Virus record (IMG/VR): IMGVR_UViG_3300027708_000012
Location: 124,001-188,000 of that record
Direction: 5' to 3' (one strand)
DNA length: 64,000 nucleotides
Shown here: positions 9,201-59,785 of the stretch, one piece after another
How positions within the stretch are numbered: position 1 is the first letter of the stretch
Layout: the number at the start of each line of letters is the position of its first letter
Program-made: the position numbers and the translations under genes
The notes under the pieces: model-generated
The model's input: only the letters and a program-made list of their open reading frames with translations
What the model was told of the DNA's origin: nothing
Database searches by the model: none

Positions 9201-9201
9201 A

Positions 9202-11106: not shown

Positions 11107-11113
11107 ACCGACA

Positions 11114-11119
11114 TAAATA
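11114..11119 (+). promoter_or_regulatory. Late-type promoter element (CA)TAAATA
   Basis: Intergenic, 21 nt upstream of the ATG at 11141. Confidence 0.5.
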
Positions 11120-11140
11120 TACAAACAAGGAAAAGGCGCA

Positions 11141-30923: not shown

Positions 30924-31249
30924 CTTTTTCTAAAATCTTCTACATCTTGAATTGCTGATTTTAATGTTTCTGCATAATTAAGGGCGCCTTGTTTACGTAG
31001 AATTAGTGTCGTTTCTGTATCAATGTACCCTTTACTTAGTAATGACCAAATGTGATACCACCGTGTCTTAGACCAAAAATTACTTTTTACAGTAGCGTAT
31101 ATAGTTACACTAATCTCATTGGCATCTGCTTCTACCCACACATTATGATCATGCTGGGAATCAGTACACTCACAAACAACTCGATAGACTTTACTATCTC
31201 CCCATTCGTTTGTTTTTAGAATGCCTTCAGCTGGTGTTTGGTATTTCAT
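30920..31249 (-). CDS. Hypothetical protein
   Basis: 109 aa ORF with a CxC...H motif. Confidence 0.55.
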   Translation of the reverse strand: MKYQTPAEGILKTNEWGDSKVYRVVCECTDSQHDHNVWVEADANEISVTIYATVKSNFWSKTRWYHIWSLLSKGYIDTETTLILRKQGALNYAETLKSAIQDVEDFRKR

Positions 31250-31362
31250 TTAATTTCTTTAATTATATATTTTGATGCAGGGTAATTTTCTCGAAGCCAT
31301 TCCAACAGACCAGGTTCAACCGGAAAACGAACATTATCAAATTTGTTAGTAATATATTTCAT
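31246..31362 (-). CDS. Small hypothetical protein (38 aa; not in the ORF track)
   Basis: MKYITNKFDNVRFPVEPGLLEWLRENYPASKYIIKEIK; ATGA overlaps at both ends. Confidence 0.6.
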   Translation of the reverse strand: MKYITNKFDNVRFPVEPGLLEWLRENYPASKYIIKEIK

Positions 31363-32096
31363 TTTGAAGCGTACTCTTGTTGCATCTTAATATTGTCAAA
31401 GAACTCTTTCTTAGTACCGTGGTCATCTTTAAATGCACCTTTCAATACTGTTGTCTGCGTCAAACTACTTTTAGCCATAATGCCGCGATTCTCACAACAA
31501 CCGTGTATAGCTTGTACATACACACCTATGTCTCTAGCTTCTGTTGCTTTTTGGATTTCACGGGCAATGTCATTGCAAAGCTCCTCTTGGAGTGTGCCTC
31601 GACGGGCACACCATTGTGCAATACGGGTGTACTTAGATAAACCAATAAGTTTTTGTGCCGCGATAATACCAATATAAGCAACACCGGTAACAGGCTGGTG
31701 ATGATGACTGCACATACTGCGCAACTCACTACGAACAACGAGCATACCTTCATAACGGTCTGCAGAATCATTTGGAAACGCTGTTGCGTCTGGTGCTTGT
31801 TCATACCTACCACTCATTACTTCATTAAAATACATTTTAGCCAATCTCTTGGCTGTGCCTTTTGAATTAGGATCGTTTTCGCGATCAATAAGCAAAGTAT
31901 CTAATACTTTTTCAAAAGCCTCTGTTGCTTCTTTGATTAAAATTGCTTTGTCTTCTTCGCTAACGTATTCGCTAATGTTGTCACCTGCCCAGAAGCGTTT
32001 ATTATCACGCTTCATCTTAAAGCGGATAACATCTGCAAGGTTACACTCTTCGTAGCCTTTATCGTCAATATTTTGATATGTTACGGATTCAGTCAT
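31359..32096 (-). CDS. folE: GTP cyclohydrolase I
   Basis: SMCSHHHQP, IGLSKY.R, LQE and H.C...RG motifs. Confidence 0.95.
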   Translation of the reverse strand: MTESVTYQNIDDKGYEECNLADVIRFKMKRDNKRFWAGDNISEYVSEEDKAILIKEATEAFEKVLDTLLIDRENDPNSKGTAKRLAKMYFNEVMSGRYEQAPDATAFPNDSADRYEGMLVVRSELRSMCSHHHQPVTGVAYIGIIAAQKLIGLSKYTRIAQWCARRGTLQEELCNDIAREIQKATEARDIGVYVQAIHGCCENRGIMAKSSLTQTTVLKGAFKDDHGTKKEFFDNIKMQQEYASK

Positions 32097-47069: not shown

Positions 47070-47096
47070 GAAAATGGCAGAAATTAATCTGCCATT
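47070..47096 (-). terminator. Probable intrinsic terminator
   Basis: 9-bp stem AATGGCAGA/TCTGCCATT immediately after the stop at 47101, with a short U-run. Confidence 0.55.
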
Positions 47097-47100
47097 ATAA

Positions 47101-49149
47101 TTAACCGCGAGCTATTTTCAACCAACGATCCAATTCGTCATTGTTTTCTTTTACTGGTTTGATATCTGCCAGGATCTCAGCTAGTTTGCTAGGATCTACA
47201 CCAGCAACTTGGAATGTACCAAACAATTGTTTCTTTTCTATAGGAACAACTTTTAATCCTGCGGCTGCGAGCGTATCAAAGAATGGTTTTTCCTGTCCTG
47301 ATGTAACCCATTTGTACGGGAATTCTTTTACGGCACCACCGCCACCAAACGGATCACCTTCACCTCCGCTAAGATCTCGATATTTGATAATACCGTCTTT
47401 AGGATCAATAAAGTTTCCACTGCCTTGTGGAGTAGTCATTTTTCTAACTTGCCCACGAGCCGATGCTATAGCGTCATCTTGTTTGAATTTATCGTAATCT
47501 GCGCGAGCTGTATTGCCTGACGGCATTGCGGCAATATTATTTGGCCTAGGTTTATTGGCATTCATTGCCAATGCACTAGCTGCACCGGATGCATGACCTC
47601 TATCAGTTGCTAATTGCAATGCACTTGCACCTTCGGCACGATCTAATACTTCTTGAGCATGACTTACAGCAGCGTCCCACTTTTGATCTTCGCCGTAATC
47701 GTGACCCATTATTTCACGAATTTGTGCAATTAATGCTTTTTGATCAGCTGTTAATTCTGGTTTTGTGTCTGGTTTTGTGTCTGGTTTTGTGTCTGGTGTC
47801 GGATCGTCATGCGGCATTGGTGCAATAACATTCGGCGCAACTGGATTATTCGGTGTTGGTTGCGGTTCTGGTTTATCACTTCCTGGCGTTAATGCCAACC
47901 CTGCTCCAGTACCTAACGCTGCTCCAGCTAGTGCTGTCTTTACTGGATTTCGACCAACAACTTGACCTGCTTTAAATGCAGAACTTGGCCCTTTATATTT
48001 TACATTTTTTGCAAGACCTACATTGGGTAACGGAGTTACATTAGGACTTGCGGCACCTTTAGTAAAGTTTTTAACACCCTTCCAAGCATCTTTACCTAAT
48101 TCAATTCCTTTACCAAGTAGTTCGCTTGCTGCACCTTCGTCTGCATGTTGTTCAGCTTCAATCATTGCCAAACGATCTCGTAAACTTGCAATATTTTCTG
48201 CTACAGTTTCAGATGTTACTCCGTATTTTTGCATAGCCGCCTGAGTCTTTGGACCCATTTTGCCATCTGCAGTAATTTGTGCGCCTTTAGCAATTAACTT
48301 TTGTTGTATAGCAAATACTTTAGGATCACCGCCAGGTGGCATTGTTGTACCAGCCGGAGCGGCTGCTACAGTTGCTGGTTGACCGGCAGGCGCAGTACCG
48401 TCAAATTCACCGTGCTTGTAATCGCGAGCTAGGTTAGCGGCATCTAATCCTAATGATGCGGCAGTACCAATACCTGGAACTAATGATGCTAAACCACTTG
48501 CGCCAGCCATACCAGCGCCAACCCAGTCACCTTTTTTAGCGCGGTTATATGCATCAGCGGCACCAAATGCTAAACCAACACCTGGAATAGCCTTGCCTAA
48601 CATTTTACCAACGCCTTTTGCAGCTCCGTAAGTCCCAGCGCCAACTGCTGCTTGCTGTGCTAGACTTGCTTCAGATTCTGTTTGATAACCAAAACTTTCC
48701 ATCAATGCATTGGCAATATCAAAAGAAACACCCTCTTTTAAGGTTTTTTCCAATTGATCCACTAGTGCATTTAATTTTGCAATATCTGCATCTTCTAAAG
48801 CATCGTTGCCTTTTGGCGGCTTGTTTGTGGTGCCTGTTGGTGTTGGAGCAATATTAGCTGTAGGTGCAGGCTGTGACGGACTATTACGTTGTGCATTCAT
48901 CTGATTGTAATATTGTTCGCGTCCGTATGACTGTCCAGGTACTATAGGCATTCCAGGTTGTGGACCACCTTGTTGTGTAGGAGTTTGATTTCCTCTGTTA
49001 GCTAGTAAAGCACCGCCGGCTGCACCTAATCCTAACATTGGTAAAAGATTTGCATTTGCTCTTGCGATCGATCCTTCAGGGTCTTGACGATAGAAATTCC
49101 CACCTTCGTCGATATTATCAATTTTGTTGAGTAAATCTCTAATGTTCAT
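47101..49149 (-). CDS. Putative internal virion/ejected protein with Gly-zipper hydrophobic helices and a peptidoglycan-binding-like domain
   Basis: PGBD-like 'VFAIQQKL...ADGKMGPKTQAAM'. Several GxxxG hydrophobic stretches. N-terminus MNIRDLL, C-terminus ELDRWLKIARG. Confidence 0.6.
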   Translation of the reverse strand: MNIRDLLNKIDNIDEGGNFYRQDPEGSIARANANLLPMLGLGAAGGALLANRGNQTPTQQGGPQPGMPIVPGQSYGREQYYNQMNAQRNSPSQPAPTANIAPTPTGTTNKPPKGNDALEDADIAKLNALVDQLEKTLKEGVSFDIANALMESFGYQTESEASLAQQAAVGAGTYGAAKGVGKMLGKAIPGVGLAFGAADAYNRAKKGDWVGAGMAGASGLASLVPGIGTAASLGLDAANLARDYKHGEFDGTAPAGQPATVAAAPAGTTMPPGGDPKVFAIQQKLIAKGAQITADGKMGPKTQAAMQKYGVTSETVAENIASLRDRLAMIEAEQHADEGAASELLGKGIELGKDAWKGVKNFTKGAASPNVTPLPNVGLAKNVKYKGPSSAFKAGQVVGRNPVKTALAGAALGTGAGLALTPGSDKPEPQPTPNNPVAPNVIAPMPHDDPTPDTKPDTKPDTKPELTADQKALIAQIREIMGHDYGEDQKWDAAVSHAQEVLDRAEGASALQLATDRGHASGAASALAMNANKPRPNNIAAMPSGNTARADYDKFKQDDAIASARGQVRKMTTPQGSGNFIDPKDGIIKYRDLSGGEGDPFGGGGAVKEFPYKWVTSGQEKPFFDTLAAAGLKVVPIEKKQLFGTFQVAGVDPSKLAEILADIKPVKENNDELDRWLKIARG
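47756..47796. repeat. 12-bp tandem repeat x3 (encodes PDTK)
   Basis: tctggttttgtg x3 followed by tctgg. Confidence 0.9.
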
Positions 49150-49151
49150 TT

Positions 49152-50498
49152 TTATTCCTTTGGTACACAGTTAGGCACTGTGCGTCCGCCTTTTTTCTTA
49201 GTACCAACTGGATGATAACCTGTCCAGCATGGGTTTGAATTCTTTAATGTGCGCTTTTTAGCATTGGCTTCTTTGATAGGGTTTTGTTCGTGTTTCTTCA
49301 AATCGTTATCAAATTGTTTTACAGTGGCTTTGTTAATGCCTTTGAATCTCTTATCGCCTCGAGCATAGTTACCTTCGGCATCTGCTTTTTTAGCATCAGC
49401 ATAAGCAGCTTTTTTATACTTGCCTAACGTATCAGTACTTAATTCTTCAAGTGTACCCGGAGTGCCAGGACCTGGTTTGAATCCCATACTGTGTCCAGGA
49501 ATCTCATTTTCTTCAACATTTGAACTTAGTGCATGACCAGCTGGCCATTGAATTTTTGCCACATTTCTAAATTGATGTTGCCACTTCTGTGCATACTGCT
49601 CATCCGGAAATTGTAACATCCATTTTCTCTTATGATTTTTTATTCCTAATATCACCGGTAAGGTGATTAGATTTTTAGGTGCATCTTGTTCGAGTTTTTC
49701 TATATGAACCAGTTTCAACACATTACTATACAAATGAGCATAGTGATATGCTTCATTCCTAGATTTAAAATATTTTGTTTCTTCTTTGGGCGGTGTAGGT
49801 TTTCCAACAACGCTATTATTAATAGTTTGAAATGTAGCCGCCCATTGTAACGGAGTTACTCCATTGTTGCCTTTAATTTCTCTTTCTAAAGCACGAAGGG
49901 CACGATCAACATTAAGGTCGTTACCATAATAATCTAACATGGCTTGAAAATGTTTAGAATCAAATTTTTCAGGATTGTAGTTATCAAAATCAGTTGGAAA
50001 ATCTCCGTTGTCTACAGGATTCCATGTTTTATTCTCTTTAAACTTTATAGCATGTGTCTTAGGAGAATTCTTATAAACTTTGTGTTCATTGTCTATAGAT
50101 TTTAATGCCTGCTGTTTAGCAATACGTTCAGCTTTTTCTTCTTGTTTAGATTCTTTCATCAATACACGTTCAGCAATAGTGCTGGCATATTGATTAATTA
50201 ATTGACGTTTTTGTGCTTTGTGTTCAGCAATCTCGTCTTCTACTTTGTGAAAATATTTTCCAATAGTAGTTTCTCGACCAACTGGTTTATTAGCTAATTG
50301 TGTTTTTTCTTTAGGCTGTTGATAGTGTTGCATTGCCATTTGAACGGGCAACGATACTTTATGAGGTGTAGCTTCTTGCAATAGTTGAACATTTGCGTTT
50401 TTATCAATAATAGATAAAAACTTAGCCATGCTATCAACACCTACTACAGGCTTTGTAGCAACACCATCCATCGCCTGTAGTATGCGTTTCATGTCCAT
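49152..50498 (-). CDS. Putative internal head protein
   Basis: N-terminus MDMKRIL, multiple [LIV]xE sites, C-terminal PCWTGY...VPNCVP motif. Confidence 0.5.
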   Translation of the reverse strand: MDMKRILQAMDGVATKPVVGVDSMAKFLSIIDKNANVQLLQEATPHKVSLPVQMAMQHYQQPKEKTQLANKPVGRETTIGKYFHKVEDEIAEHKAQKRQLINQYASTIAERVLMKESKQEEKAERIAKQQALKSIDNEHKVYKNSPKTHAIKFKENKTWNPVDNGDFPTDFDNYNPEKFDSKHFQAMLDYYGNDLNVDRALRALEREIKGNNGVTPLQWAATFQTINNSVVGKPTPPKEETKYFKSRNEAYHYAHLYSNVLKLVHIEKLEQDAPKNLITLPVILGIKNHKRKWMLQFPDEQYAQKWQHQFRNVAKIQWPAGHALSSNVEENEIPGHSMGFKPGPGTPGTLEELSTDTLGKYKKAAYADAKKADAEGNYARGDKRFKGINKATVKQFDNDLKKHEQNPIKEANAKKRTLKNSNPCWTGYHPVGTKKKGGRTVPNCVPKE

Positions 50499-50502
50499 CG
50501 GA

Positions 50503-52122
50503 TTACCCCAATAGACGTTTTGTCAATGCACGGATTTGATCAACCTCACGGTTTTCAACAAGTGCTGGCTTTTCAGTACGATTTAAACGACCTGTTAGTT
50601 CTTGCATACGTGTAAAATCTGTAGACTCTTTTACAGTCTCTTTCTTTTTGTCACCGACAGCTTTCTTCATCGGTTCTTTCTTATCACCGTCTTTGTCCAT
50701 ATCTAAAAAGTCAGGCTTAACAGCTTTTGATTTTTCAGCAATGTAAGCTGTAGTTTCTTTGATGTTCTTCCACATAGCAGCTGCAGCAATCTTCTTACCC
50801 TTCTCACCGCCACCAGCTGACTTAGCTACTTTGTCAAAGCTCTTGCCTGGCTTGCCAATGTCTCCACCTGCCTTGGCTTTTTTAACTACAGCTGATTTCT
50901 TAGCCTTGCTTAGACCTGCACTTGGCTTGGCACTTTCTTTAACTGGCTTGCAAGTACATTCTCGCATAGTCATTTCGCATTCTTTACACATCTTAGAAGC
51001 TTCTTTCAAGTTGCCTGCTTTCTTAGCGGCACGAATTTTGCTACCTAAGTATTCGTCTTTACCAGACTCAACTTTACCGTCTTTATCGTAGTCTTTTTTA
51101 GCCATTTTACTTTTAGCTTCGTCTACTTTATCGCGATTGTCAAACTTTTCGTTGTCTTTCATTCCCCAAGTCTTAGCACTCTTAGGAGATTGTTTTAGTG
51201 CAGGAGCGCGGTCTTTCTTTTCTGCAGCACTTTGTGCCTTAGCGTGACTCTTAGTACCTTTACCTGATTTGGCGTTTGAAGCAATTTCATCGCCTTCGTC
51301 TTTATAGCTAGTATTTTTATGAGTAACACCTGTACTAGTTTTAGTTGCTACACCGGTGCGAGTCTTAAATGTATCACCAGTCTTAGATTTGTTGTCAAAT
51401 CCTTCTTTAGTAGTGCTAATTGGATCTTTCTGACCTGCTGGAGCCGGCATCATAGAGCCTAACTTTTTAGCTTCTTCTGCATCTTTAGCGCCTGATGGAT
51501 TTGGTACTACTGTTAAGTTTTCATCAACTTCTTCATCGTCTGGAATACCATTATGATTTCTGTCTAAACGCTTACTAGCAGCATGGAATGCTTTAGTTTG
51601 TTTATTATATTTTTCAACTTTAGATTTAACATGATCTGGAATTGGTTTTGGTGCTTCGTAAACCATGCCAGTACCGCCACATTCTGTACAAGCACGTTCA
51701 CCGCCACTTAATACACCTTCGTCAACTTTTTTGTCTTTAAGTTTTTCAGCTTGGGTTTTCTTAAGATTCTTAACTTTATCTTTTGCCTCTGATAGCATTT
51801 CTTTTAATCTCATTTTTTGTCCCTCGCTTAATGTGTCGCTATTATCTAAATGATGCCCGTACTCACTAAACTTCATTTCGTATTCTAGATAGTGATAAAC
51901 CGATGCAATATAGTCAGCAGCTTTAGTAATCTTTGCTTGTACCCATGCTTCCAACTGATCTTCATCGTTCATTTGTTGGTATAGCTTGTGTGAATAATTG
52001 GCTAGTTTGAATAAATCAGCTTTGGCCATAGCGCCTTCACGGTCTGTGTCGCCGTGTGTACCGATTACTTCACCTTCTGGTTGTTGGTCCATTTCTGGTT
52101 CCATGTTGTCTAATCCTGGCAT
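50503..52122 (-). CDS. Putative prohead core/internal protein, Lys-rich
   Basis: Many [LIV]xE-[A/G/S/N/T] sites, a CTECGGTG motif, and DxDxDG-type motifs. Confidence 0.55.
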   Translation of the reverse strand: MPGLDNMEPEMDQQPEGEVIGTHGDTDREGAMAKADLFKLANYSHKLYQQMNDEDQLEAWVQAKITKAADYIASVYHYLEYEMKFSEYGHHLDNSDTLSEGQKMRLKEMLSEAKDKVKNLKKTQAEKLKDKKVDEGVLSGGERACTECGGTGMVYEAPKPIPDHVKSKVEKYNKQTKAFHAASKRLDRNHNGIPDDEEVDENLTVVPNPSGAKDAEEAKKLGSMMPAPAGQKDPISTTKEGFDNKSKTGDTFKTRTGVATKTSTGVTHKNTSYKDEGDEIASNAKSGKGTKSHAKAQSAAEKKDRAPALKQSPKSAKTWGMKDNEKFDNRDKVDEAKSKMAKKDYDKDGKVESGKDEYLGSKIRAAKKAGNLKEASKMCKECEMTMRECTCKPVKESAKPSAGLSKAKKSAVVKKAKAGGDIGKPGKSFDKVAKSAGGGEKGKKIAAAAMWKNIKETTAYIAEKSKAVKPDFLDMDKDGDKKEPMKKAVGDKKKETVKESTDFTRMQELTGRLNRTEKPALVENREVDQIRALTKRLLG

Positions 52123-52148
52123 GAGTATACTCCGTTATCTTTATATAT

Positions 52149-52688
52149 TTAGTGTCTTTTGATGACTTTAGGACCACCGAACAGGCTAGTACTTTTAATA
52201 TCTAATCCGTTTTTAGCAGTACCGTTTTTATTTTTAGGTTGTACTACTTTGGGTTGTGGAGGTGCTTTTGTACCACTTTTGCCTGGCGACCCTGTGTAAC
52301 TCTTTTTACCACGGGCTTTTCCTGGGCTAATATGTGGAGCATCTACAGTACCAATATTTGCGGCACTAGTAGCACCTGCACTTGCTGTTTCTTCTAAAGA
52401 TCTAGCTACGTGAACTTGCTTACCATTAGCTGCTAGCTTTCTAGCAACATTTTCTGCATGACTTTTTGAACCAAATGTTTTCCATTTGCGTCCGTTAATG
52501 TGAACATCGTGCGGAACATCTGTTTGATAATGGTGTTGCTGACGATGCTTACGAGGATCTCCAGCACCAATTCTGTCGTGTGCTGCACTATAATCCCAGC
52601 TATCGGGACCTTCGTCGTTACCCGGAGATAGACTCATACCGCTATCATCGTATCCGTGTCTGCCTTCTAAAAGTTCTTTAATTTTCAT
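52149..52688 (-). CDS. Putative internal head protein
   Basis: N-terminus MKIKELLEG; also LEETASAGATS. Confidence 0.5.
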   Translation of the reverse strand: MKIKELLEGRHGYDDSGMSLSPGNDEGPDSWDYSAAHDRIGAGDPRKHRQQHHYQTDVPHDVHINGRKWKTFGSKSHAENVARKLAANGKQVHVARSLEETASAGATSAANIGTVDAPHISPGKARGKKSYTGSPGKSGTKAPPQPKVVQPKNKNGTAKNGLDIKSTSLFGGPKVIKRH

Positions 52689-52689
52689 T

Positions 52690-52902
52690 TTATTTTCCTA
52701 CAGGCTTTTCGCCAGTCATATAGGGCAAACTAAACCATAACTGAAACCACTCGGGTGTTCCTGGTTTAATATTGTTCTCACGCATTAATTTGGCCTTTTC
52801 AGTTCCAGTAATGCTTATATTCATTCCGCCTAGCTCGTAAGGTTGCAGGCCTTTAAATTCATTAACGCCAGCTAACTTTTTAAGACGAGCAATTTCATCC
52901 AT
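52690..52902 (-). CDS. Small putative head-associated protein
   Basis: MDEIARLKKLAG...IKPGTPEWFQLWF. Confidence 0.5.
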   Translation of the reverse strand: MDEIARLKKLAGVNEFKGLQPYELGGMNISITGTEKAKLMRENNIKPGTPEWFQLWFSLPYMTGEKPVGK

Positions 52903-53339
52903 TATTTTAAACTTGCTCTCAGCATCCAGCTATGTTTTTTGTGTGCATCTTGTCTATCAGCTAGAAAATTACTTAGTCCGTGATCACCGTGCTCTTCTGC
53001 CATGGTGAAAGTAATACGAAATATATTAGCCATGCGCTCGCTATCTTCTAATAATTCGCTTAACATTCCGTGAAAATCTGGTACAGCGTTTTCGTCTTCT
53101 ACTTTAGTAAGCATACTAAATTTAGCTAAACTTGCTGGAGTGTATACTTGTAACGCACGTAACTGTTCGGCAAACGTATCGATGCTACCATATACTTCGT
53201 CATAGATACGTTCAAATAGAATATGTAACTGATAAAATAGCGGACCTTCTGCGTTCCAGTGAAAATTTTGTGCCTTTAGTGCAAATGCATATTCACTAGC
53301 AAATGCAGTTTTAAGTGCTAAATGATATTTCTCGTCCAT
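52902..53339 (-). CDS. dps: Dps/ferritin-like DNA protection protein
   Basis: FHWN.EG..F..LH..FE..Y......D.FAEQLRAL...HKKHSWML. Confidence 0.9.
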   Translation of the reverse strand: MDEKYHLALKTAFASEYAFALKAQNFHWNAEGPLFYQLHILFERIYDEVYGSIDTFAEQLRALQVYTPASLAKFSMLTKVEDENAVPDFHGMLSELLEDSERMANIFRITFTMAEEHGDHGLSNFLADRQDAHKKHSWMLRASLK

Positions 53340-53340
53340 T

Positions 53341-54603
53341 TTAAATTCCGTACTTGTTCTTTTTTGGTTTAGCTACAATGCTTTTAGTGTTAGCACCTGT
53401 GGGCTCCACGCTCTTACCAAAAGAGCTAACATGTTTGCCATCTGTTGGAATAGTTTTCATAGCCGAACGAACCATGTTATCTTCCGCTTGTGTCATTGGA
53501 TGTATTGTGTTGTACTTTTCAAACCAAGTATCAACATTAACGCCGTCAATTTTTCCAGTACTAACGCCGTCTGCCATAGCCATAGCCATCATTAACCTAT
53601 TCATGTGGTATACACGATCGTATCCGCCTACATCGCGAGCACGGGTGACACCTTTGCCCACAGCATCGTGATCTGGGTGTAGCTTAGTAGTGCCTTCTTT
53701 GATAAATTCGTTAGCTTTCATTTCTCTTAATAGTTTATTAGCATATTTAATCAAATTTTCGTCGGATCGTCTATATACTTGTTGTGCTTTTTTATTGCCC
53801 AAGTCTCTTTCTATTTTCTCTGGATCCTTGGCTTTTTCTTTTTCAAAGTACTTACGCATTTCTTCAGAACTAACAGTTTTCTTTTTAACAGGGTTATCAG
53901 TCTTTGCTAAGAATCCCATTAAACTTTCGTCGGCTACCTTTTCTTTCTTAGGCTTTTTAGGTGCTTTTCCAAATGCAGGGTCGGCCATACGTTGTTCTGC
54001 TTTATGCATTAAATCTAATACTTCGTCATCGCTTAGTTCAGGACTCATTGCATCTCGCCACGCTTGAAACTTTTGTTCCTCAGTAGCATTTGGATCTTGT
54101 AATATGGCTCGCATAGGTGTAGCACGTGGACCTTCCTCATCACGACTAGGATCATTTGTTTCTTGACGAGCAATAACATTCAAACTGTTAAAATTAAATG
54201 GAACATTTCCAGCTTTGTCAGGTTTACCGTTATAGTTTTTAACATAACTTAGCGCATTAACTTGATCAGCACCGACAACAACGGTAACGTCAGTATAGCC
54301 ATGCTTACTTAACTGAGATAGTACACGAGTTAAATCAGGCATTTCGTCAGTTGCGGTATGGAAAATATGTCCGTGCTTGGGAAACACTTTCTTATAGATA
54401 TGTAATTTTTCGTCTGGAGTGATTGGATCGTCTTTACCTACTGTACGACTAACAACAAAGTATGGATCTGCTCCGTGGTCTTTAGCTTGGGTAATAACAC
54501 TACTGGCTAGATACATGTGACCTTTGTGGCCCATACCACGACCCCAGCCAACTACAGCGGCTTTGCCTTCTCCTGTACGATTAAGAAATTCACGTAATAA
54601 CAT
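53341..54603 (-). CDS. HxGH (cytidylyl/adenylyl-transferase-like) nucleotidyltransferase with C-terminal extension
   Basis: VVGWGRGMGHKGH, DPIT..EK, VVVGADQ and ATPMR. N-terminus MLLREFL. Confidence 0.7.
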   Translation of the reverse strand: MLLREFLNRTGEGKAAVVGWGRGMGHKGHMYLASSVITQAKDHGADPYFVVSRTVGKDDPITPDEKLHIYKKVFPKHGHIFHTATDEMPDLTRVLSQLSKHGYTDVTVVVGADQVNALSYVKNYNGKPDKAGNVPFNFNSLNVIARQETNDPSRDEEGPRATPMRAILQDPNATEEQKFQAWRDAMSPELSDDEVLDLMHKAEQRMADPAFGKAPKKPKKEKVADESLMGFLAKTDNPVKKKTVSSEEMRKYFEKEKAKDPEKIERDLGNKKAQQVYRRSDENLIKYANKLLREMKANEFIKEGTTKLHPDHDAVGKGVTRARDVGGYDRVYHMNRLMMAMAMADGVSTGKIDGVNVDTWFEKYNTIHPMTQAEDNMVRSAMKTIPTDGKHVSSFGKSVEPTGANTKSIVAKPKKNKYGI

Positions 54604-56456
54604 TAGTCTTTCCTCGGAGCCCAGTTGGCCTGGTCAATAGTTTTAACAAACTGTCCAGGCAAATCATTTTTAAATTTACCCCCAGGGTGTGCTTGTACGT
54701 ACCCTTCTGGTTTTGTCTGTCGTATACCGCCGTGTGTACCGGTGCTTAATGCACCAATTACTTTCATTTTTTCGTGTGTTAATAATTCAACAGCACTTAG
54801 TACAGCATCTAAGCCAGGATGACTTAGAACTTTTTGTGCCTGAGTATTGCTTAGTTTTGCAGTAGCCCATTGTTCAAACTTTTCTTTAACACCTTCAACA
54901 CGTAAATTTTGATTAAAGAAACTATACAATACATCACCGGGTTTACTTAGACCAGGTTGCCCTGCAACAAAACTATCAATTGCAGCTTTGTGTTGTTTAA
55001 TAAATGCTTCAGCATGCTTTAATCCCTCTTCGTCTACTTTAGGAGCATGCTCAACATATGTTGTACCTTGTACAATAACATCTGCTGTTGATAATTTTTC
55101 AGCATTTGGATAACGTGTTTCGTCAGCACCAATGTGTGTATAAAAACCTGTAGCAGCTATCATTACTTTTGCTTTAGCAATGCGTTTTCCTAGAGCACTA
55201 CCTGCTGGAATGTGGAAGGCTGTGATATTAGGTTGAAAATCGTATTCGTTTGTACTAGGATTTAATCTTGCTGGTGCAAGAGGACTGAATAGTATACCAC
55301 CTTCGATATATCCTTTTTTAGGACTAATGCTTTCAAAGTAAGGCCATAAATCAGCAAGCCCTTGTGCAAATGCACGTCTTTGATCTTCTTGACCAGGCTG
55401 TGGATTGCCTGTACCTAGAATAAACATAGCAACATCGTCTGGGTCATTCATCATGGTTGTAACACCGCTCTTGGTATGAGTAGTGCCACGTTTCATATAA
55501 TCCCAAGCGTTTTTTGGAAACATATGGAACACACCGTGCTCATCACGGCCCCAGTAGATAACAGGACTACCGTCCCATTTTAATTCTATGCTACCACCTT
55601 TGCTAGTCATGTGACGCAGACGTTCAACGGCATGCAGTCCGCCAGTGCTACCATTGGTAAACACTAGATCTTCAATATGTTGATACTTGCGACCTACTGT
55701 AGGTGCGGCGGCTTCATTAATTGGTTGCGGACTAACAGCTTGCCAACTTGCACCGCTTGATGCTTGTTGATATATGCTATTGCGTCGAGCTTCGTCGGGA
55801 ATAGCGTTCATGATGCTTTCTACACTTCCTAGATCTGCTGCCTTGGCATGTTTACCTAATAGTCGTTTAGCAATAACATCTAAATCATCGCTGATAAAAT
55901 CAGCTTTTTTACCCATAGCATCTCTAGCATATAGACCTTCATCGGGCGACCATAACATACCTTGATTGCTAGCCAATGCATTCATCATCATTTGTTTATG
56001 AACACCTTTGTAAGGGCTACCTTGGGGAATAGCATGATGATGGAATTTGTGAACTTTCTCGGCATTACCAACAGTTTTAATATCTACCTGATAGAATTTT
56101 TCTTTATAAGGCAATAAGATATGTACAGTTACGCCAGTTTTTTTAGTTTGTAAACCTTTGCTTTGTAGATATTTTTCTAACTCAATACGAGTAGTCTTGC
56201 CGTCTTTAGTACCAAACTTTTGCGCAAGCTGACTAGCATCTACCATTACATCCAAGTCACCGCTGATCTTTCCGGGAGTTGGAGTAGCAGCACTACCGAT
56301 TACATACGCATGAGCACCGACACCGCTGAGATAACGATTTGTTTCGTGTACTAGGTGACTGGCAATAGCCTGATCAAAACCTTCAGATTCAGGCCAAATA
56401 TTACCGCCTTCTAACAAAGGCTTTTTAACAGACCTAAATAATTCACGTAGTAACAT
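54603..56456 (-). CDS. Fusion of a Pol-beta-type nucleotidyltransferase and a ligase-like (KxDG) domain
   Basis: N-terminal half: IGS...GDLDV...YQVD. C-terminal half: HIEDL...LKWDGSP...EG..LF...EGYV...VK.ID. Linker PINEAA. Confidence 0.65.
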   Translation of the reverse strand: MLLRELFRSVKKPLLEGGNIWPESEGFDQAIASHLVHETNRYLSGVGAHAYVIGSAATPTPGKISGDLDVMVDASQLAQKFGTKDGKTTRIELEKYLQSKGLQTKKTGVTVHILLPYKEKFYQVDIKTVGNAEKVHKFHHHAIPQGSPYKGVHKQMMMNALASNQGMLWSPDEGLYARDAMGKKADFISDDLDVIAKRLLGKHAKAADLGSVESIMNAIPDEARRNSIYQQASSGASWQAVSPQPINEAAAPTVGRKYQHIEDLVFTNGSTGGLHAVERLRHMTSKGGSIELKWDGSPVIYWGRDEHGVFHMFPKNAWDYMKRGTTHTKSGVTTMMNDPDDVAMFILGTGNPQPGQEDQRRAFAQGLADLWPYFESISPKKGYIEGGILFSPLAPARLNPSTNEYDFQPNITAFHIPAGSALGKRIAKAKVMIAATGFYTHIGADETRYPNAEKLSTADVIVQGTTYVEHAPKVDEEGLKHAEAFIKQHKAAIDSFVAGQPGLSKPGDVLYSFFNQNLRVEGVKEKFEQWATAKLSNTQAQKVLSHPGLDAVLSAVELLTHEKMKVIGALSTGTHGGIRQTKPEGYVQAHPGGKFKNDLPGQFVKTIDQANWAPRKD

Positions 56457-56458
56457 TT

Positions 56459-56830
56459 TTAATCCTTGTATTTTCCAGCAGATATATGTTCTTTAACTTC
56501 TTCATACATTTTGGTGCAAGCCTGCTTACAAGTATCTTCACTTAGCTCGTCATCTAATTCTCGTATTGGAAACTTTTTCTTATAAAGTTTGTAACATTCT
56601 TTAATGGCTTCTGCAAACATTTTACTATGTGTAGCTTTTTTGCCTTTGATGCCATCAATACATTTCATTAAAACAGGATAAACATGTCTACGATAGATAT
56701 GATCATCGTTATGCATGAAATGGATGAGATCTTCGACTAGGTCGTAGTCAATTTCACGCTTTTCGCCAGTTGCTTTGACAAAATCGTCTTCTTTGAAATT
56801 ATTGTTTTCTAGTAATTCTCGTATACGCAT
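56459..56830 (-). CDS. Hypothetical protein with head-protein-type N-terminus
   Basis: Likely start at MRIRELLEN (56830); ATG 56848 is an alternative. Confidence 0.5.
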   Translation of the reverse strand: MRIRELLENNNFKEDDFVKATGEKREIDYDLVEDLIHFMHNDDHIYRRHVYPVLMKCIDGIKGKKATHSKMFAEAIKECYKLYKKKFPIRELDDELSEDTCKQACTKMYEEVKEHISAGKYKD

Positions 56831-56889
56831 TTTAAGCCCAAGTTTCATACCCAAGGTATTCCATTGGGTTTAGAGTATTTATCAACAAA

Positions 56890-57519
56890 CTATGCTTTAA
56901 TGATGCGTTCTATTTTAGAAATACTACCGCCTAAATGCATCTTAGCAAGCAATAAATTGTTATTGCCCGTAATATAGAAGTGGGAGCCGCCCCAGCTGCG
57001 TTGTTTTTCTAATTCTCTAATGCAACTTTTAGTTAATTTGCATTTTTTATTGGAACTTGCCCACTCAATAAATGCAGGGTTGGGTTGATTAGTTTTTCCT
57101 ATAGTAACTCGAAAATCAAAGTTCATTTTAGGCATGATCACAGTATCTACAGCGATCCCAGTTGCTGGCGGCTCTGAAATATATTTGATTTTATTAATAT
57201 CTATATTTGCAATCGCATCAATTTCGTTTCTACTGTTGCTATAAATTGTAAGCCACGGACTTTCTACACGTAAACTAATATCCGATAAAGTAGAAATTAC
57301 AGTTGCTAACTTAATTGCATATTCTAAATCTTCTTTAGAACGGATATTAGAACTTCTCCACCCACTAACTTTTTGAGTTTCGAATACTTTTACTTGACTA
57401 AGTTCGGTTAATGCTTTATCCATGTCACCACTACGAAACCATGCCGCACCTGGACATACCGATACTATTTTGTATTGATATCGGTTGTGGAATAGTTTCG
57501 TAGTAAGTTTATAATGCAT
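56890..57519 (-). CDS. Hypothetical protein
   Basis: 209 aa ORF. Confidence 0.55.
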   Translation of the reverse strand: MHYKLTTKLFHNRYQYKIVSVCPGAAWFRSGDMDKALTELSQVKVFETQKVSGWRSSNIRSKEDLEYAIKLATVISTLSDISLRVESPWLTIYSNSRNEIDAIANIDINKIKYISEPPATGIAVDTVIMPKMNFDFRVTIGKTNQPNPAFIEWASSNKKCKLTKSCIRELEKQRSWGGSHFYITGNNNLLLAKMHLGGSISKIERIIKA

Positions 57520-59785
57520 CTATATTAACTAATGACGTAGGTGCATTAACAGTTAACAACGGAGTTTTTGATTCCTTAGGAGTTGATAACAACACTAATT
57601 TATCAAACTGTACTGTAATGCTGAGCAACCCGCCGTTTTTTAAATCTCCAAACAGCATGAGTTTTGCCAAAGGTCGTTTAATTTCCTTATCAATAACACG
57701 CTGTAGCGGGCGAGCACCCATCTTAGGATCAAAGCCTTTGGTAATCAACCAATTAGTACTTTCCTTATCTAGTTTGATCTTAATGCCTTTTTCTTTAACT
57801 TGCGCACGTAATTCATCCATGAACTTAACAACAATTTTAGTCATTGTTTCTTTAGCAAGTTTATTGAATGTAATAATACCATCTAAACGATTACGGAACT
57901 CTGGTGTAAAGAACTTTTTCAAGTCTTTATCACTGTAGTCTTTTTCTTGTGTACCAAAACCAATAACATTCTTCTCGGCATCTTGTGCGCCAGCGTTAGT
58001 AGTCAAAATTAACACAATGTTTCGGCAATCTGCTTGTTTCCCGTTTGAACCAGTAATAAAACCATTGTCCATCATTTGTAACAATACAGTTGTTACATCC
58101 GGATGTGATTTTTCAACTTCGTCGAACAACAGAACAGCATTTGGATTTTCTTGAATCTGTGTAATCAACAAGCCTGCATTTTCTTCAAAGCCAACATAAC
58201 CGGGAGGGCTACCAATTAGCTTAGAGATGCTATGCTTCTCTTGGTACTCTGACATGTCAAACCGTAGTAGCTTGACACCCAAGTGCTTGGCAAGCGACTT
58301 GGCAGTTTCGGTCTTACCACAACCAGTTGGTCCCATGAATACAAACGATCCAATAGGCTTGCCTTCGCTTTTCAGTCCAGCTTGAGCAACCATAATCTTA
58401 TCTACAATTTCTGTAACAGCAAGATCTTGCCCATAAACTTCTTTTTGTAGGTTATCCTGTAGCGTAGCAAGATTACTAGACTCAGTTTCCATAATCTTTT
58501 CTTCAGGCATCTGAATCATTTTAGCAAGTTCATATTGAATTTCACGTTCGCCAATGATACGTTCGTCTGCAAGTTTAAGATTAAAACGACTACATGCTAC
58601 ATCAATTAGATCAATAGCCTTGTCTGGAAGTTTTTTGTCTGTTTGATACTTAACTGACAATTTAATAGCAGCATCAATAGCATCATCACGAATTTTAACT
58701 TTGTGAAAACCTTCGTAGTATTTCTTAATACCTTTAAGGATTTGTTTAGTTACTTCGATAGTTGGCTCATCAACTGTAATGCGTTGGAATCGACGCATTA
58801 GCGCACGATCTTTTTCAAAGTGCTTGCGATATTCTTCCCATGTAGTACTAGCAATAACTTTAATATTGCCTTTACTCAACGCAGGCTTCATCATGTTGGC
58901 AAGATCGTTAGCCGAGTTACCAGCAGAACCAGCACCGCTAATCATGTGTGCTTCGTCGATGAACAAAACAGTCTTGCCCTTCTTCTGCAATGCCTTAATA
59001 ACAAGTTTAAAGCGTTCTTCAAAGTCACCGCGATACTTAGATCCGGCAAGCATGGCTGAAATGTCTAGACTGTAAACTTTGTATTCTTTCAAGAATTCTG
59101 GAACAGCACCGTTTACAATATTGTAAGCAAGTCCTTCTGCAATAGCGGTTTTACCTACGCCAGGATCTCCTACTAGAATCACATTATTTTTTTGTCGACG
59201 TCCTAATGCTAGAGCAATATTTTCTAGTTCGTCGATTCGACCAATAACCGGATCAACTTTTTGTTTTTCAACAAGATCGTTAAGATTGCTTGTAAATGCC
59301 TTTAGTGCTTTTTCACCTTGTGAATCGCTAGGCGATTCTTCATCTTGATCAGTATTACTATTGTTTAAATAGTCGTTAAATTTATCTTTATCGATATTAG
59401 CCTGCATGATATAAAAATGAGCCCAACTACGCTTCTCAGCCATCATACTCAACATAATATCTGTAGGTTCGATACGTTGTCGACCATTAAACAAGACTTG
59501 TGTAAATGCACGATTAAGTACACGCTCTACACTTTGAGTTTTCTTTGGTTTTACTACAACATCAGGAACTGTAATTTCTTCACATTTATTCTGTATGTAT
59601 TCTGTTAAATTATTTTTTAATGCTGTTGCATCTGCTCCGTATCCTTGTAGGATATCGGTAAATGCTGAATCTGATAACATTGCAAACAACAAGTGCTCGA
59701 TTGTTAAGTATTCGTGATGTAGCTTTTTAGCAGTATCTATTGCTTTTTCAAAAACTGCCTGCAGGTTATCACTTGGTTCGACCAT
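57509..59785 (-). CDS. clpA: ClpA-like AAA+ chaperone
   Basis: Clp N-domain (HEYLTIEHLL), GDPGVGKT, GPTGCGKT, RFDMSEY and an IGF loop. No ClpB middle domain. Confidence 0.93.
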   Translation of the reverse strand: MVEPSDNLQAVFEKAIDTAKKLHHEYLTIEHLLFAMLSDSAFTDILQGYGADATALKNNLTEYIQNKCEEITVPDVVVKPKKTQSVERVLNRAFTQVLFNGRQRIEPTDIMLSMMAEKRSWAHFYIMQANIDKDKFNDYLNNSNTDQDEESPSDSQGEKALKAFTSNLNDLVEKQKVDPVIGRIDELENIALALGRRQKNNVILVGDPGVGKTAIAEGLAYNIVNGAVPEFLKEYKVYSLDISAMLAGSKYRGDFEERFKLVIKALQKKGKTVLFIDEAHMISGAGSAGNSANDLANMMKPALSKGNIKVIASTTWEEYRKHFEKDRALMRRFQRITVDEPTIEVTKQILKGIKKYYEGFHKVKIRDDAIDAAIKLSVKYQTDKKLPDKAIDLIDVACSRFNLKLADERIIGEREIQYELAKMIQMPEEKIMETESSNLATLQDNLQKEVYGQDLAVTEIVDKIMVAQAGLKSEGKPIGSFVFMGPTGCGKTETAKSLAKHLGVKLLRFDMSEYQEKHSISKLIGSPPGYVGFEENAGLLITQIQENPNAVLLFDEVEKSHPDVTTVLLQMMDNGFITGSNGKQADCRNIVLILTTNAGAQDAEKNVIGFGTQEKDYSDKDLKKFFTPEFRNRLDGIITFNKLAKETMTKIVVKFMDELRAQVKEKGIKIKLDKESTNWLITKGFDPKMGARPLQRVIDKEIKRPLAKLMLFGDLKNGGLLSITVQFDKLVLLSTPKESKTPLLTVNAPTSLVNIDAL

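What the first reader, a model, noticed from the sequence alone, without database searches (positions are those of the whole stretch)
47101..56830. Block of putative capsid-targeted, protease-processed internal proteins sharing terminal address motifs
Seen: otherwise unrelated ORFs begin with similar peptides (MNIRDLL, MDMKRIL, MKIKELLE, MLLREFL, MLLRELF, MRIRELLE). Several carry a second helix motif (DEIARLKKLAG, DELDRWLKIARG, DFTRMQELTG). Their domains are separated by [LIV]xE-[A/G/S/N] sites (LKEG, LQEA, IKEA, LSEG, VDEG, VKES, LLEG, INEA). Established: the T4 gp21 prohead protease cleaves after [LIV]-x-E, and T4 internal proteins use short N-terminal capsid-targeting peptides. Inference: a modular cargo system that loads diverse domains into the head, releases them by proteolysis and injects them with the DNA.
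Basis: partly seen in the sequence, partly recalled or inferred. Interest (0 to 1): 0.7.

Follow-up and report, generated by a model that had tools for sequence, protein, structure and literature searches.

The report
Capsid-addressed cargo operon of jumbo phage
A late-expressed 9.8-kb operon of an uncultured 345-kb T4-related jumbo phage encodes unrelated proteins, including a PolX-like polymerase fused to a ligase-like domain, that carry the short leader T4 uses to load proteins into its head, so they are probably packed, trimmed by the head protease and delivered with the DNA.

Summary
Six of nine consecutive minus-strand genes (window 47101-56830) start with M-[RLK]-[LIA]-[RK]-E-[LF]-[LF]-x-E. 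In 80 related metagenomic loci, 244 of 416 genes inside the block carry this leader, against 3 of 469 outside.

The leader closely matches T4 propeptides that the prohead protease removes (gp24 MAKINELLRE|S, IPII/III MKTYQEFIAE|A). The genome encodes a T4-type S77 prohead protease, portal, scaffold and gp23-type capsid protein. A small protein in that head module starts with the invariant leader MILRELF.

One late-promoter motif (ATAAATA, kept in 70 of 76 relatives) precedes the block and a hairpin follows it.

When genes are fused or split among relatives, each module boundary keeps either a leader or an [LIV]-x-E site. In the AlphaFold model both p617 sites lie in disordered linkers.

The second motif (..R-K-L-A-G..) is the invariant C-terminus of the scaffold protein. 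p539 and the scaffold rank first and second genome-wide for excess cleavage motifs.

Presence in the virion, cleavage and injection remain untested. This is a larger, enzyme-carrying variant of the T4 internal-protein system.

The parts
56876..56882 (-). ATAAATA late-promoter-like motif, about 50 nt upstream of the p123 start and just after the stop of the preceding 209-aa gene
   Evidence: ATAAATA is the most enriched 7-mer upstream of genes: 59 upstream regions against 2.6 expected. It precedes many large, presumably structural, genes, including tail-fibre genes of this window, and several leader genes. It is present upstream of p123 in 70 of 76 relatives, 0 of 55 ClpA genes and 0 of 75 p209 genes. 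A gp55-like sigma factor is in the genome.
56459..56830 (-). p123: the first cargo gene, with leader MRIRELLE|N. Function unknown; found only in this phage clade.
   Evidence: orthologues start MRI[RQNK]ELLE[NGS]; 108 metagenomic homologues, none named; no lead from the protein atlas.
54603..56456 (-). p617. Layout: leader residues 1-16 (MLLRELF..KPLLE|G); PolX-like polymerase domain about 18-233; disordered linker 234-257 holding INE248|A; ligase-like KxDG (DUF6267) domain 258-617.
   Evidence: Pfam DUF6267. AF2 model pLDDT 77.8, with residues 1-17 and 234-257 below 50. Pol beta/lambda and ASFV PolX matches at Z 10.5-11.6. For domain 2, most of the top-ranked VIA-align matches are ATP-dependent ligases, but at Z no higher than 5.6. 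K293, D295 and G296 are invariant.
53341..54603 (-). p420. Layout: leader MLLREFL; cytidylyltransferase-like domain about 10-210; then an embedded leader-like segment (..EMKANEFIKE|G, about residues 293-303); then a C-terminal module ending ..KPKKNKYGI.
   Evidence: phrog_3041 and phrog_395 cytidyltransferase. Atlas clusters with PF01467. The C-terminal module exists as separate 124-aa genes that start MRAKEFLSE|R in relatives.
52902..53339 (-). Dps/ferritin-like DNA-binding protein (145 aa). It has no leader but is co-transcribed with the block.
   Evidence: Pfam Ferritin 1.1e-19; phrog_3636.
52690..52902 (-). p70: a small protein starting MDEIARLKKLAG, a copy of the scaffold's C-terminal motif.
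   Evidence: [KR][KR][LI]AG[LIV] occurs 4 times in the genome against 0.1 in shuffles.
52149..52688 (-). p179: leader MKIKELLE|G, a variable middle, and a conserved C-terminal module of about 70 aa (..ASAGATSAANIGTV..LFGGP..IKR).
   Evidence: Minimal 78-79-aa orthologues consist of the leader plus this module.
50503..52122 (-). p539: a lysine-rich protein with 10 [LIV]xE[AGSN] sites and a C-terminal helix motif (..DFTRMQELTG...VDQIRALTKRLLG). It looks like a core or scaffold protein that is cut into peptides.
   Evidence: It ranks first of 386 genes for site excess (10 observed, 1.6 expected, P = 6e-6), and the scaffold ranks second. Sites at residues 110, 133 and 497 are conserved in all aligned orthologues.
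49152..50498 (-). p448: a long leader, MDMKRILQAMDG...LLQE42|A, a variable middle, and a conserved Cys-containing C-terminus.
   Evidence: LQEA is conserved as [LIV]xE in 14 of 14 orthologues.
47101..49149 (-). p682: leader MNIRDLLNKIDNIDE15|G, a glycine-zipper hydrophobic segment (about 167-260), a weak peptidoglycan-binding match (about 275-320), a Pro-rich region, and the C-terminal DELDRWLKIARG. It is a likely envelope-acting ejection protein.
   Evidence: the glycine-rich segment is shared with cyanophage proteins annotated endolysin or gpD-like. (the IDE|G site is kept in 13 of 13 orthologues). (C-terminus conserved).
47073..47096 (-). A 9-bp hairpin followed by UUUU, directly after the last block gene. 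It is a probable terminator closing the late unit.
   Evidence: -13.2 kcal/mol; z = -5.3; 0 of 200 shuffles fold as well.

Best explanation
The block is a single late transcription unit of capsid cargo and core proteins in a T4-related jumbo phage.

Proposed mechanism:
1. Each cargo gene, or each module of a fused gene, begins with a short amphipathic leader, M-[RLK]-[LIA]-[RK]-E-[LF]-[LF]-x-E. This is a copy of the propeptide found on T4-type head proteins.
2. During prohead assembly the leader docks the protein onto the scaffolding core.
3. Some proteins instead or additionally carry a helix ending ..[RK]-K-[LI]-A-G. This copies the invariant C-terminus of the scaffold protein and probably uses the scaffold's own docking site.
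4. After the shell closes, the S77 prohead protease cuts after [LIV]-x-Glu. That removes the leaders, separates fused modules (PolX-like from ligase-like in p617; cytidylyltransferase-like from the C-terminal module in p420), and chops p539 into small basic peptides, as it does the scaffold.
5. The mature proteins stay in the DNA-filled head and are probably ejected with the genome. p682 (glycine zipper plus peptidoglycan-binding match) would act at the envelope. The PolX-like, ligase-like and nucleotidyltransferase enzymes would act on nucleic acid at the very start of infection.

Shown here: the motifs, their conservation, the operon structure, the head genes and the predicted folds.

Inferred: docking, cleavage, retention in the head, ejection and the enzymatic roles.
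For: Motif match to proven substrates:
- Leaders match real T4 gp21 substrates read from the T4 genome: gp24 MAKINELLRE|S, IPII/III MKTYQEFIAE|A, and the gp23 segment ..KPLLEGEG. Compare p123 MRI[RN]ELLE|[NG], MRAKEFLSE|R and p617 ..KPLLE|G.

Head machinery:
- The genome has an S77 protease, a gp23-type capsid protein, and portal, scaffold and acidic core proteins.
- A 79-aa protein between the portal and protease genes starts with the invariant MILRELFYID.
- The capsid protein has Y-L-x-E|S with a variable P2 residue, lying just before the conserved segment that in T4 gp23 follows the maturation cut (my reading by eye).

Leader distribution:
- 244 of 416 in-block ORFs against 3 of 469 outside in 80 loci.
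- 18 of 386 genes against 3 expected, with clustering P = 1.4e-5.
- Selection acts on the peptide, not the nucleotides.
- In 125 of 147 unique leaders, the first [LIVMF]xE after the helix places its Glu at residues 7-17 (at residue 8 or 9 in 84). Control N-termini give 130 of 434.

Fusion and split comparisons:
- p617 fused: ..PINE|AAAPTVGRKYQ. Split: (M/GTG)RLRELFE|AAPPKVGRKYQ.
- p420 fused: ..MKANEFIKE|GTTKLHPDH. Separate gene: MRAKEFLSE|RTGKHHPDH.
- p617-p420 fusions have ..NIQE|NINRTGEGK or ..RLQE|DLQRTG at the junction.

Structure and expression:
- AF2 places LLE16|G and INE248|A in disordered segments between folded domains.
- The late promoter is conserved only at the head of the block, a gp55-like sigma factor is encoded, and a terminator hairpin closes the unit.

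Site density and the second motif:
- p539 and the scaffold rank first and second genome-wide for site excess.
- The scaffold C-terminus ..D[IM]R[RK]LAGLK[IF] is invariant. The motif occurs 4 times against 0.1 expected.

Cultured relative:
- In phage PA5oct (scaffold 40% identical), three motif-bearing proteins carry the record's ESI-MS/MS flag for detection in virions: 0150 MKINDIITE|G, 0349 MHLFELFDQ and 0235 ..DRIKKLAGIS (proteome paper PMC7318152).

Literature:
- CTS-directed loading and removal of the leader by gp21 are described in PMC5694885 and PMC3012670.
Against: - There is no proteomic, structural or genetic evidence for this phage, and no cultured phage carries the block.
- The complex prediction of p123 with the capsid and scaffold proteins gave no answer.
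- The same ligase-like and cytidylyltransferase gene pair is leaderless in T4-like cyanophages, and the cytidylyltransferase is leaderless and not flagged as virion-detected in PA5oct. These enzymes are therefore ordinary intracellular proteins elsewhere.
- The window's own p420 leader has lost the [LIV]xE that its orthologues have.
- Dps-like and p70 have no leader.
- Some listed xE sites are not conserved.
- The block lies between replication-type genes (ClpA-like, DNA polymerase).
- The ligase assignment rests on a motif and low Z-scores.
Confidence: 0.72

Rival explanations
1. The leader is a targeting or assembly signal for some other late structure or compartment, such as the tail or baseplate, the membrane, or a replication compartment. 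On this view the enzymes act inside the producing cell and are not packaged.
For: The enzyme pair is leaderless and presumably cytoplasmic in cyanophages. The block lies between the ClpA-like and DNA polymerase genes. p682 has hydrophobic glycine-zipper and peptidoglycan-binding features.
Against: The leader matches T4 head propeptides and occurs on a head-core protein in the portal-protease-scaffold module. A Glu-ending site follows the leader at a fixed distance. Junction sites are conserved in fusions. These are features of protease processing and serve no purpose for simple localisation.
Confidence: 0.13
2. The leader is a recognition tag for the phage's ClpA-like unfoldase encoded two genes upstream, acting as a degron or chaperone-client signal that controls turnover or unfolding of these proteins.
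For: A ClpA-type ATPase (TIGR02639, 880 bits) lies next to the block in all relatives.
Against: The ClpA-like and p209 genes lie outside the late unit and have no late promoter. In PA5oct the same ClpA to p85-PolB synteny holds unrelated, leaderless virion genes, so the adjacency is positional. Leader genes also occur far from clpA, for example in the head module. A Met-Leu or Met-Lys start is not a ClpS N-degron (my own knowledge).
Confidence: 0.05
3. The shared N-termini have no function. They would be a by-product of AT-rich translation-initiation preferences, of recombination cassettes at gene starts, or of chance.
For: Lys, Ile and Leu-rich starts are common in AT-rich genomes. T-even internal-protein loci are known recombination hot spots (PMC3012670).
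Against: Leader residues are kept through many synonymous codons. In-block ORFs match 244 of 416 times against 3 of 469 outside. Leader-like copies are embedded at fusion junctions. One leader uses a GTG start. The genome has six-fold more matches than composition predicts.
Confidence: 0.03

Closest known systems
Phage T4 internal proteins IPI, IPII, IPIII and Alt, with their capsid targeting sequence (CTS), processed by prohead protease gp21
   Same: - A short N-terminal leader ending in [LIV]-x-Glu sits on otherwise unrelated proteins.
- The leader resembles the propeptides of the vertex and capsid proteins.
- The genome has a T4-type S77 protease, scaffold, portal and gp23-type capsid protein.
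- The genes lie away from the head module, among non-structural genes, behind a T4-like late promoter.
- Gene content in the locus varies among relatives.
   Different: - About nine genes form one 9.8-kb operon, and roughly a dozen more leader genes lie elsewhere in the genome.
- Cargo includes large predicted enzymes (PolX-like plus ligase-like, cytidylyltransferase-like) rather than small basic inhibitors.
- Modules are fused into polyproteins with conserved internal [LIV]xE junctions.
- A second motif is shared with the scaffold C-terminus.
- There are two leader lengths: 8-9 residues and 15-42 residues.
- There is no experimental evidence.
Inner-body and ejection proteins of phiKZ-like giant phages (phiKZ, SPN3US), processed by the S80 prohead protease
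   Same: Many head-internal proteins have N-terminal propeptides and multiple cleavage sites ending in Glu. Paralogues share N-termini. Packaged enzymes are ejected with the DNA (PMC5694885).
   Different: - The protease family differs: S80 there, S77 here.
- The motif differs: (S/A/G)-x-E there, [LIV]-x-E here.
- Their propeptides are mostly longer than 100 residues; here they are 8-42.
- That lineage is unrelated and has no gp22-like scaffold.
Polyvalent proteins of phages and conjugative elements (Iyer et al. 2017, PMC5512222)
   Same: Disparate enzymatic domains are joined in one polypeptide that is predicted to be delivered with the DNA and released by proteolysis. Here, fusions among relatives reach 984 and 1564 aa.
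   Different: - These proteins contain no peptidase, MuF or portal-linked domain.
- Release is proposed to depend on the separate prohead protease.
- Addressing uses a T4-type leader.
- Domains occur as separate genes as often as fused.
Scaffolding-protein C-terminal coat-binding helices (for example P22 gp8; named from my own knowledge)
   Same: The scaffold here ends in an invariant short helix motif. Cargo and core proteins carry copies of it at a terminus.
   Different: There is no sequence similarity to P22. The binding partner here is unknown. Reuse of a scaffold terminus as a cargo address is my inference and is not a documented mechanism.

Membership tests
T4-type CTS-addressed head-internal proteins | The genome encodes a T4-type (MEROPS S77) prohead protease with gp20, gp22 and gp23-type head genes | tested here: met
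   PF03420 scores 92 bits, above its cut-off. PF07068 scores 268 bits. The gene order is portal, p79, acidic core protein, protease, scaffold, capsid protein.
T4-type CTS-addressed head-internal proteins | A short N-terminal leader resembling proven gp21-removed propeptides and ending in [LIV]-x-Glu | tested here: met
   T4 leaders were read from NC_000866 and compared with the block leaders. The Glu lies at residues 7-17 in 125 of 147 leaders, against 130 of 434 controls.
T4-type CTS-addressed head-internal proteins | The leader is shared by otherwise unrelated proteins in a locus whose content varies | tested here: met
   The domains are unrelated. New leader-bearing ORFs appear in relatives' blocks.
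T4-type CTS-addressed head-internal proteins | Late expression together with head genes | tested here: inconclusive
   The ATAAATA motif is conserved upstream of the block and of many large, presumably structural, genes. A gp55-like sigma factor is present. No transcript data were examined.
T4-type CTS-addressed head-internal proteins | The protein is present in purified heads with its leader removed and is ejected on infection | not testable with these tools
   The phage is uncultured. The only indirect support is that three motif-bearing proteins of the relative PA5oct are flagged ESI-MS/MS in its record.
phiKZ-like inner-body proteins | S80 protease, an (S/A/G)-x-E motif, and propeptides longer than 100 residues | tested here: not met
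   The protease is S77. P3 is Leu, Ile or Val. Leaders are 8-42 residues.
Polyvalent proteins | Two or more disparate enzymatic domains in one polypeptide within a virion-packaging context | tested here: met
   p617 joins a PolX-like and a ligase-like domain. Relatives have 984-aa and 1564-aa fusions that add the cytidylyltransferase-like domain.
Polyvalent proteins | A built-in processing peptidase, or fusion to MuF or portal domains | tested here: not met
   Pfam, PHROG and NCBIfam scans of the block found no peptidase, MuF or portal domain.
Family X DNA polymerase (p617 residues about 18-233) | Pol beta-type palm and thumb fold with the catalytic GS...DxD motif | tested here: met
   Foldseek E = 6e-6 to Pol lambda. 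VIA Z = 11.6 to Pol beta and 10.6 to ASFV PolX, with 161 of 176 residues aligned. G54, S55, D67 and D69 are invariant. Activity was not tested.
ATP-dependent polynucleotide ligase / covalent nucleotidyltransferase (p617 residues 258-617) | Motif I KxDG and the adenylyltransferase fold | tested here: inconclusive
   K293, D295 and G296 are invariant. Most of the top-ranked VIA matches are RNA or DNA ligases, but at Z only 4-5.6. Foldseek finds nothing significant. Pfam names the region only DUF6267.

The most novel reading that the evidence does not exclude
This jumbo-phage clade uses a two-signal address code. One signal is an N-terminal T4-type leader. The other is a terminal helix that mimics the scaffold protein's own C-terminus. 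Together they load a nucleic-acid repair or modification kit (a minimal PolX, a ligase-like enzyme, a cytidylyltransferase-like enzyme and a Dps-like protein) into the capsid as cleavable polyproteins. Gap-filling and sealing enzymes would then enter the cell with the genome and act on it before any phage gene is expressed. The same enzymes are ordinary cytoplasmic proteins in cyanophages, so this would be a documented case of re-addressing enzymes to the virion simply by acquiring a leader.
Probability: 0.25. Interest if true: 0.75.

Novelty: new variant of a known kind. Interest (0 to 1): 0.58.

Why it matters
- T4's capsid targeting sequence is the textbook way to load proteins into a phage head, and it is also used to engineer heads. 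Outside the T-even phages its use has hardly been mapped.
- This block shows the same address in an abundant, uncultured clade of freshwater-type jumbo phages. More than 600 protease-gene matches turned up in IMG/VR.
- Here the address sits on large enzymes and on natural polyproteins. Gene fusions and splits among relatives mark the probable cleavage sites without any proteomics.
- This gives a sequence-only rule for predicting virion cargo in T4-related metagenomic phages: the leader, then [LIV]xE, behind a late promoter.
- It also gives a testable idea that a scaffold C-terminal motif can be reused as a second address.
- It points to a PolX-like/ligase-like enzyme that may be delivered with the DNA.

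Tried and rejected
- Nucleotide search of the block against 50,697 phage records found no match. tblastn with p617 and p682 found only partial domain matches in cyanophages and Xanthomonas phages, so no cultured phage carries the block.
- TATAAATA as the late promoter: only 18 copies and a poor fit. It was replaced by ATAAATA after k-mer enrichment.
- Sequence searches of p617 and p420 against PDB sequences found nothing meaningful. NCBIfam found nothing for the cargo. The protein atlas gave nothing for p123.
- Complex prediction of capsid protein, scaffold and p123 gave no answer (score 0.00). This is not evidence either way.
- PA5oct as a proteomic proxy for the block: the ClpA to p85-PolB interval is syntenic but holds different, leaderless, tail-fibre-like virion genes. 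It cannot confirm the cargo. Only three motif-bearing PA5oct proteins are flagged as virion-detected.
- The generic sigma-70 and terminator scan was uninformative: fewer promoter-like sites than in shuffles, and it missed the hairpin.
- The ClpA-degron, nucleotide-level and chance explanations were considered and rejected (see rivals).

Full report
**Context**

The window is bases 124001-188000 of a 345,369-bp IMG/VR virus record with 38% G+C, estimated 94% complete. Its DNA polymerase is 43-49% identical to those of Atu_ph07, Phosso and Rak2-like jumbo phages. Its scaffold protein is 40% identical to that of Pseudomonas phage PA5oct.

The genome carries a T4-type head module, in this order:
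- portal;
- a 79-aa protein;
- an acidic, gp67-like protein;
- an S77 prohead protease (PF03420, 92 bits);
- a 364-aa coiled-coil scaffold;
- a gp23-type major capsid protein (PF07068, 268 bits).

It also has a weak homologue of T4's late sigma factor gp55.

Between a ClpA-like gene plus a 209-aa gene on one side, and an 85-aa gene plus DNA polymerase on the other, nine minus-strand genes are packed with gaps from -1 to 26 nt. They are p123, p617, p420, a Dps-like protein, p70, p179, p539, p448 and p682.

- A simple leader pattern matches 18 of 386 genes in the genome, against about 3 expected from position-specific composition. Five of those matches fall in this nine-gene block (P = 1.4e-5).
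- Eighty related loci from IMG/VR keep the synteny ClpA, p209, p123, p617, p420... p85, PolB.
- In those loci, 244 of 416 ORFs inside the block carry the leader, against 3 of 469 outside. Leader-bearing ORFs include ones with no homologue in the window.
- From 147 distinct N-termini the consensus is M-[RLK]-[LIA]-[RK]-E-[LF]-[LF]-x-E.
- The conserved Leu and Arg positions use four to six different codons, so selection acts on the peptide and not on the RNA or DNA.

**What the leader resembles**

I read the T4 genes directly from NC_000866:
- IPII and IPIII start MKTYQEFIAE|A.
- IPI starts MKTFKEF...TITE|A.
- The vertex protein gp24 starts MAKINELLRE|S.
- gp23 contains ..KAELLNKWKPLLEGEG.. and is cut at FLTE|AEIG.

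The block's leaders are close copies:
- p123 and its orthologues start MRI[RN]ELLE|[NG].
- The p420 C-terminal module genes start MRAKEFLSE|R.
- p617 starts MLLRELFRSVKKPLLE|G.

The literature states that these 10-20-residue T4 propeptides are capsid targeting sequences. They dock proteins onto the scaffolding core and are then removed by gp21. Alt is cut at ITE-6 and LTE-619 (PMC5694885). T-even internal proteins are a diverse set sharing only the CTS (PMC3012670).

In this phage the leader also sits on the 79-aa protein between the portal and protease genes. Its start, MILRELFYID, is invariant across 80 head-module loci. The capsid protein begins MSELL..KEALLEG and has Y-L-x-E|S, with P2 varying among eight residues, just before the conserved segment that in T4 gp23 follows the maturation cut (my reading by eye).

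**Evidence for processing at module boundaries**

Natural fusions and splits among relatives serve as an experiment.

- p617 is one gene in the window, with ..SPQPINE|AAAPTVGRKYQHIEDL at the domain junction.
  - In distant relatives it is two genes. The second starts (M or GTG)RLRELFE|AAPPKVGRKYQHIEDL.
  - The first starts M-I-L-N-E|GGNIWPE and ends in a ..NEWFSRMKRMLS helix.
- The C-terminal module of p420 is fused in the window through ..EMKANEFIKE|GTTKLHPDH. Elsewhere it exists as one to three separate 124-aa genes starting MRAKEFLSE|RTGKHHPDH.
- Where p617 and p420 are fused (984 and 1564 aa), the junction reads ..NIQE|NINRTGEGK or ..RLQE|DLQRTG.

All three junction types therefore carry either a full leader or a bare [LIV]-x-Glu.

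An AlphaFold2 model of p617 has mean pLDDT 77.8. Residues 1-17 and 234-257 are the only long low-confidence segments, so LLE16|G and INE248|A lie in linkers flanking folded domains.

Across orthologues, several sites keep [LIVMF]xE while P2 varies:
- p617 site 14: 48 of 48.
- p617 site 246: 43 of 44.
- p448 site 40: 14 of 14.
- p682 site 13: 13 of 13.
- p539 sites 110, 133 and 497: all aligned orthologues.

Overall, the block has 23 [LIV]xE[AGSN] sites against 8.8 expected (P = 5e-5). Ranking all 386 genes by excess puts p539 first (10 sites, 1.6 expected) and the scaffold protein second (10 sites, 2.6 expected). The scaffold is the class of substrate T4 gp21 degrades to peptides, so p539 is probably an auxiliary core protein that is chopped up.

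**The second motif**

The scaffold ends ..N[IV][IV]D[IM]R[RK]LAGLK[IF] in all sampled relatives. PA5oct's scaffold ends ..EELRRLAGIK.

- p70 starts MDEIARLKKLAGV.
- A 326-aa late gene elsewhere in the genome contains ..NRWRKIAGLKE.
- A 116-aa ORF at window 15513-15863 ends ..RKIAGIVEL.
- The strict pattern [KR][KR][LI]AG[LIV] occurs 4 times, against 0.1 in shuffles.
- p682 (..DELxRWLKIARG) and p539 (..IRALTKRLLG) end in looser versions that are conserved among their orthologues.

I infer that this helix is the scaffold's docking element and that some cargo reuses it. This is untested.

**Expression**

ATAAATA is by far the most enriched 7-mer upstream of genes: 59 upstream regions against 2.6 expected. 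It precedes many large, presumably structural, genes, including tail-fibre genes of this window, and several leader genes elsewhere. It is one base short of T4's late promoter TATAAATA (from my own knowledge).

One copy lies at 56876-56882, just after the stop of p209. Among relatives it is present upstream of p123 in 70 of 76 loci, upstream of ClpA in 0 of 55, upstream of p209 in 0 of 75, and almost never inside the block.

A 9-bp hairpin followed by U's (-13.2 kcal/mol, z = -5.3) lies directly after p682. The block is therefore a self-contained late unit set among replication-type genes, which parallels the placement of the T4 ip genes among non-structural genes.

**Cargo**

- **p617, domain 1** is a minimal family-X polymerase. 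It matches Pol lambda at Foldseek E = 6e-6, Pol beta at Z = 11.6 and ASFV PolX at Z = 10.6. The GS...DxD motif is invariant.
- **p617, domain 2** (DUF6267) has an invariant KxDG. Most of its top-ranked fold matches are ATP-dependent RNA or DNA ligases, but only at Z 4-5.6. The assignment is probable, not secure.
- **p420** has a cytidylyltransferase-like domain.
- **p682** has a glycine-zipper hydrophobic segment shared with cyanophage proteins annotated as endolysin or gpD-like. It also has a weak peptidoglycan-binding match.
- One gene is **Dps-like**.
- **p123, p179 and p448** have no recognisable fold or named relatives.

**Counter-evidence**

- No cultured phage has the block.
- The ligase-like and cytidylyltransferase pair is adjacent but leaderless in cyanophages S-PRM1 and P-HM1.
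- PA5oct has a leaderless cytidylyltransferase-like gene in the syntenic interval that is not flagged as virion-detected. The rest of that interval holds unrelated tail-fibre-like virion proteins.
- So these enzymes are not intrinsically virion proteins. If the model is right, they were re-addressed in this clade.
- The only proteomic hint is that PA5oct proteins 0150 (MKINDIITE|G), 0349 (MHLFELFDQ) and 0235 (..DRIKKLAGIS) are flagged ESI-MS/MS in its record (PMC7318152).
- A complex prediction gave no answer.

**Verdict**

My estimated probabilities are:
- about 0.72 that these proteins are loaded into the head through the leader and trimmed by the protease;
- about 0.5 that they are then ejected with the DNA.

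This is a new variant of the T4 internal-protein and CTS system. Compared with T4 it is larger, carries enzymes, is partly polyprotein-encoded, and may have a second, scaffold-derived address.

Noticed in passing
L180 (Synechococcus virus S-PRM1, 51471-53791) and L181 (Prochlorococcus phage P-HM1, 140504-142266): The DUF6267 ligase-like gene is immediately followed by a cytidyltransferase gene in T4-like cyanophages. This is the same pair and order as p617 then p420, but without leaders. The two enzymes probably work together in one pathway of unknown function.
   Followed up: partly
PA5oct MK797984.1, 193623-219006 (L178/L179): The ClpA ... p85-like ... DNA polymerase synteny is conserved in PA5oct. 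There the interval holds large tail-fibre-like proteins flagged ESI-MS/MS and a leaderless cytidylyltransferase-like gene (0307). The interval looks like a plastic slot for late genes.
   Followed up: partly
window 15513-15863 (+): A 116-aa ORF among the tail-fibre genes ends ..DLRAKRKIAGIVEL. This is the same [KR][KR][LI]AG[LIV] motif as the scaffold C-terminus and the p70 N-terminus.
   Followed up: no
G000 outside the window: 9708-10936, 30536-31762, 99648-100853, 285192-285950, 297071-298942, 319624-322571, 336904-337314: About a dozen further genes start with the leader, for example MNFKDLMTRLQAIEE|N, MKVYEIIVE|K, MRANEFTIKE|D, MRVLDILKE|F and MKIKELLTE|S. Several lie directly behind ATAAATA. 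They are probably more capsid cargo. The gene at 319624-320604 ranks third genome-wide for cleavage-site excess.
   Followed up: partly
window 6993-12661 (+): Three consecutive tail-fibre-like genes (735, 634 and 506 aa) share an N-terminal module (phrog_15511 and phrog_14394) and have different C-terminal domains. A 2OG-Fe(II) oxygenase-like gene (14864-15433) follows them.
   Followed up: no
window 57509-59785 (-): A full-length ClpA-type AAA+ unfoldase (TIGR02639, 880 bits) is encoded by the phage. PA5oct also encodes ClpA, ClpX, ClpS and ClpP.
   Followed up: no
L029 6880 and L055 (in-block ORF of 203 aa): A GIY-YIG-type homing-endonuclease-like ORF (MDTYYVYAYLREDGTPYYIGKG..) is inserted inside the cargo block of some relatives.
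   Followed up: no
window 52149-52688 (p179) and the capsid protein at G000 88937-90112: The conserved C-terminal module of p179 begins ..E|TASAGATSAANIGTV... This resembles the capsid protein segment just after its predicted maturation cut (..E|SPTAGATSAGNVATL). It may be mimicry of the capsid N-arm.
   Followed up: no
window 2-6313 (+): An ORF open at its 5' end, longer than 2100 aa, matches a 3324-position virion structural protein family (phrog_10938) and runs off the window start.
   Followed up: no
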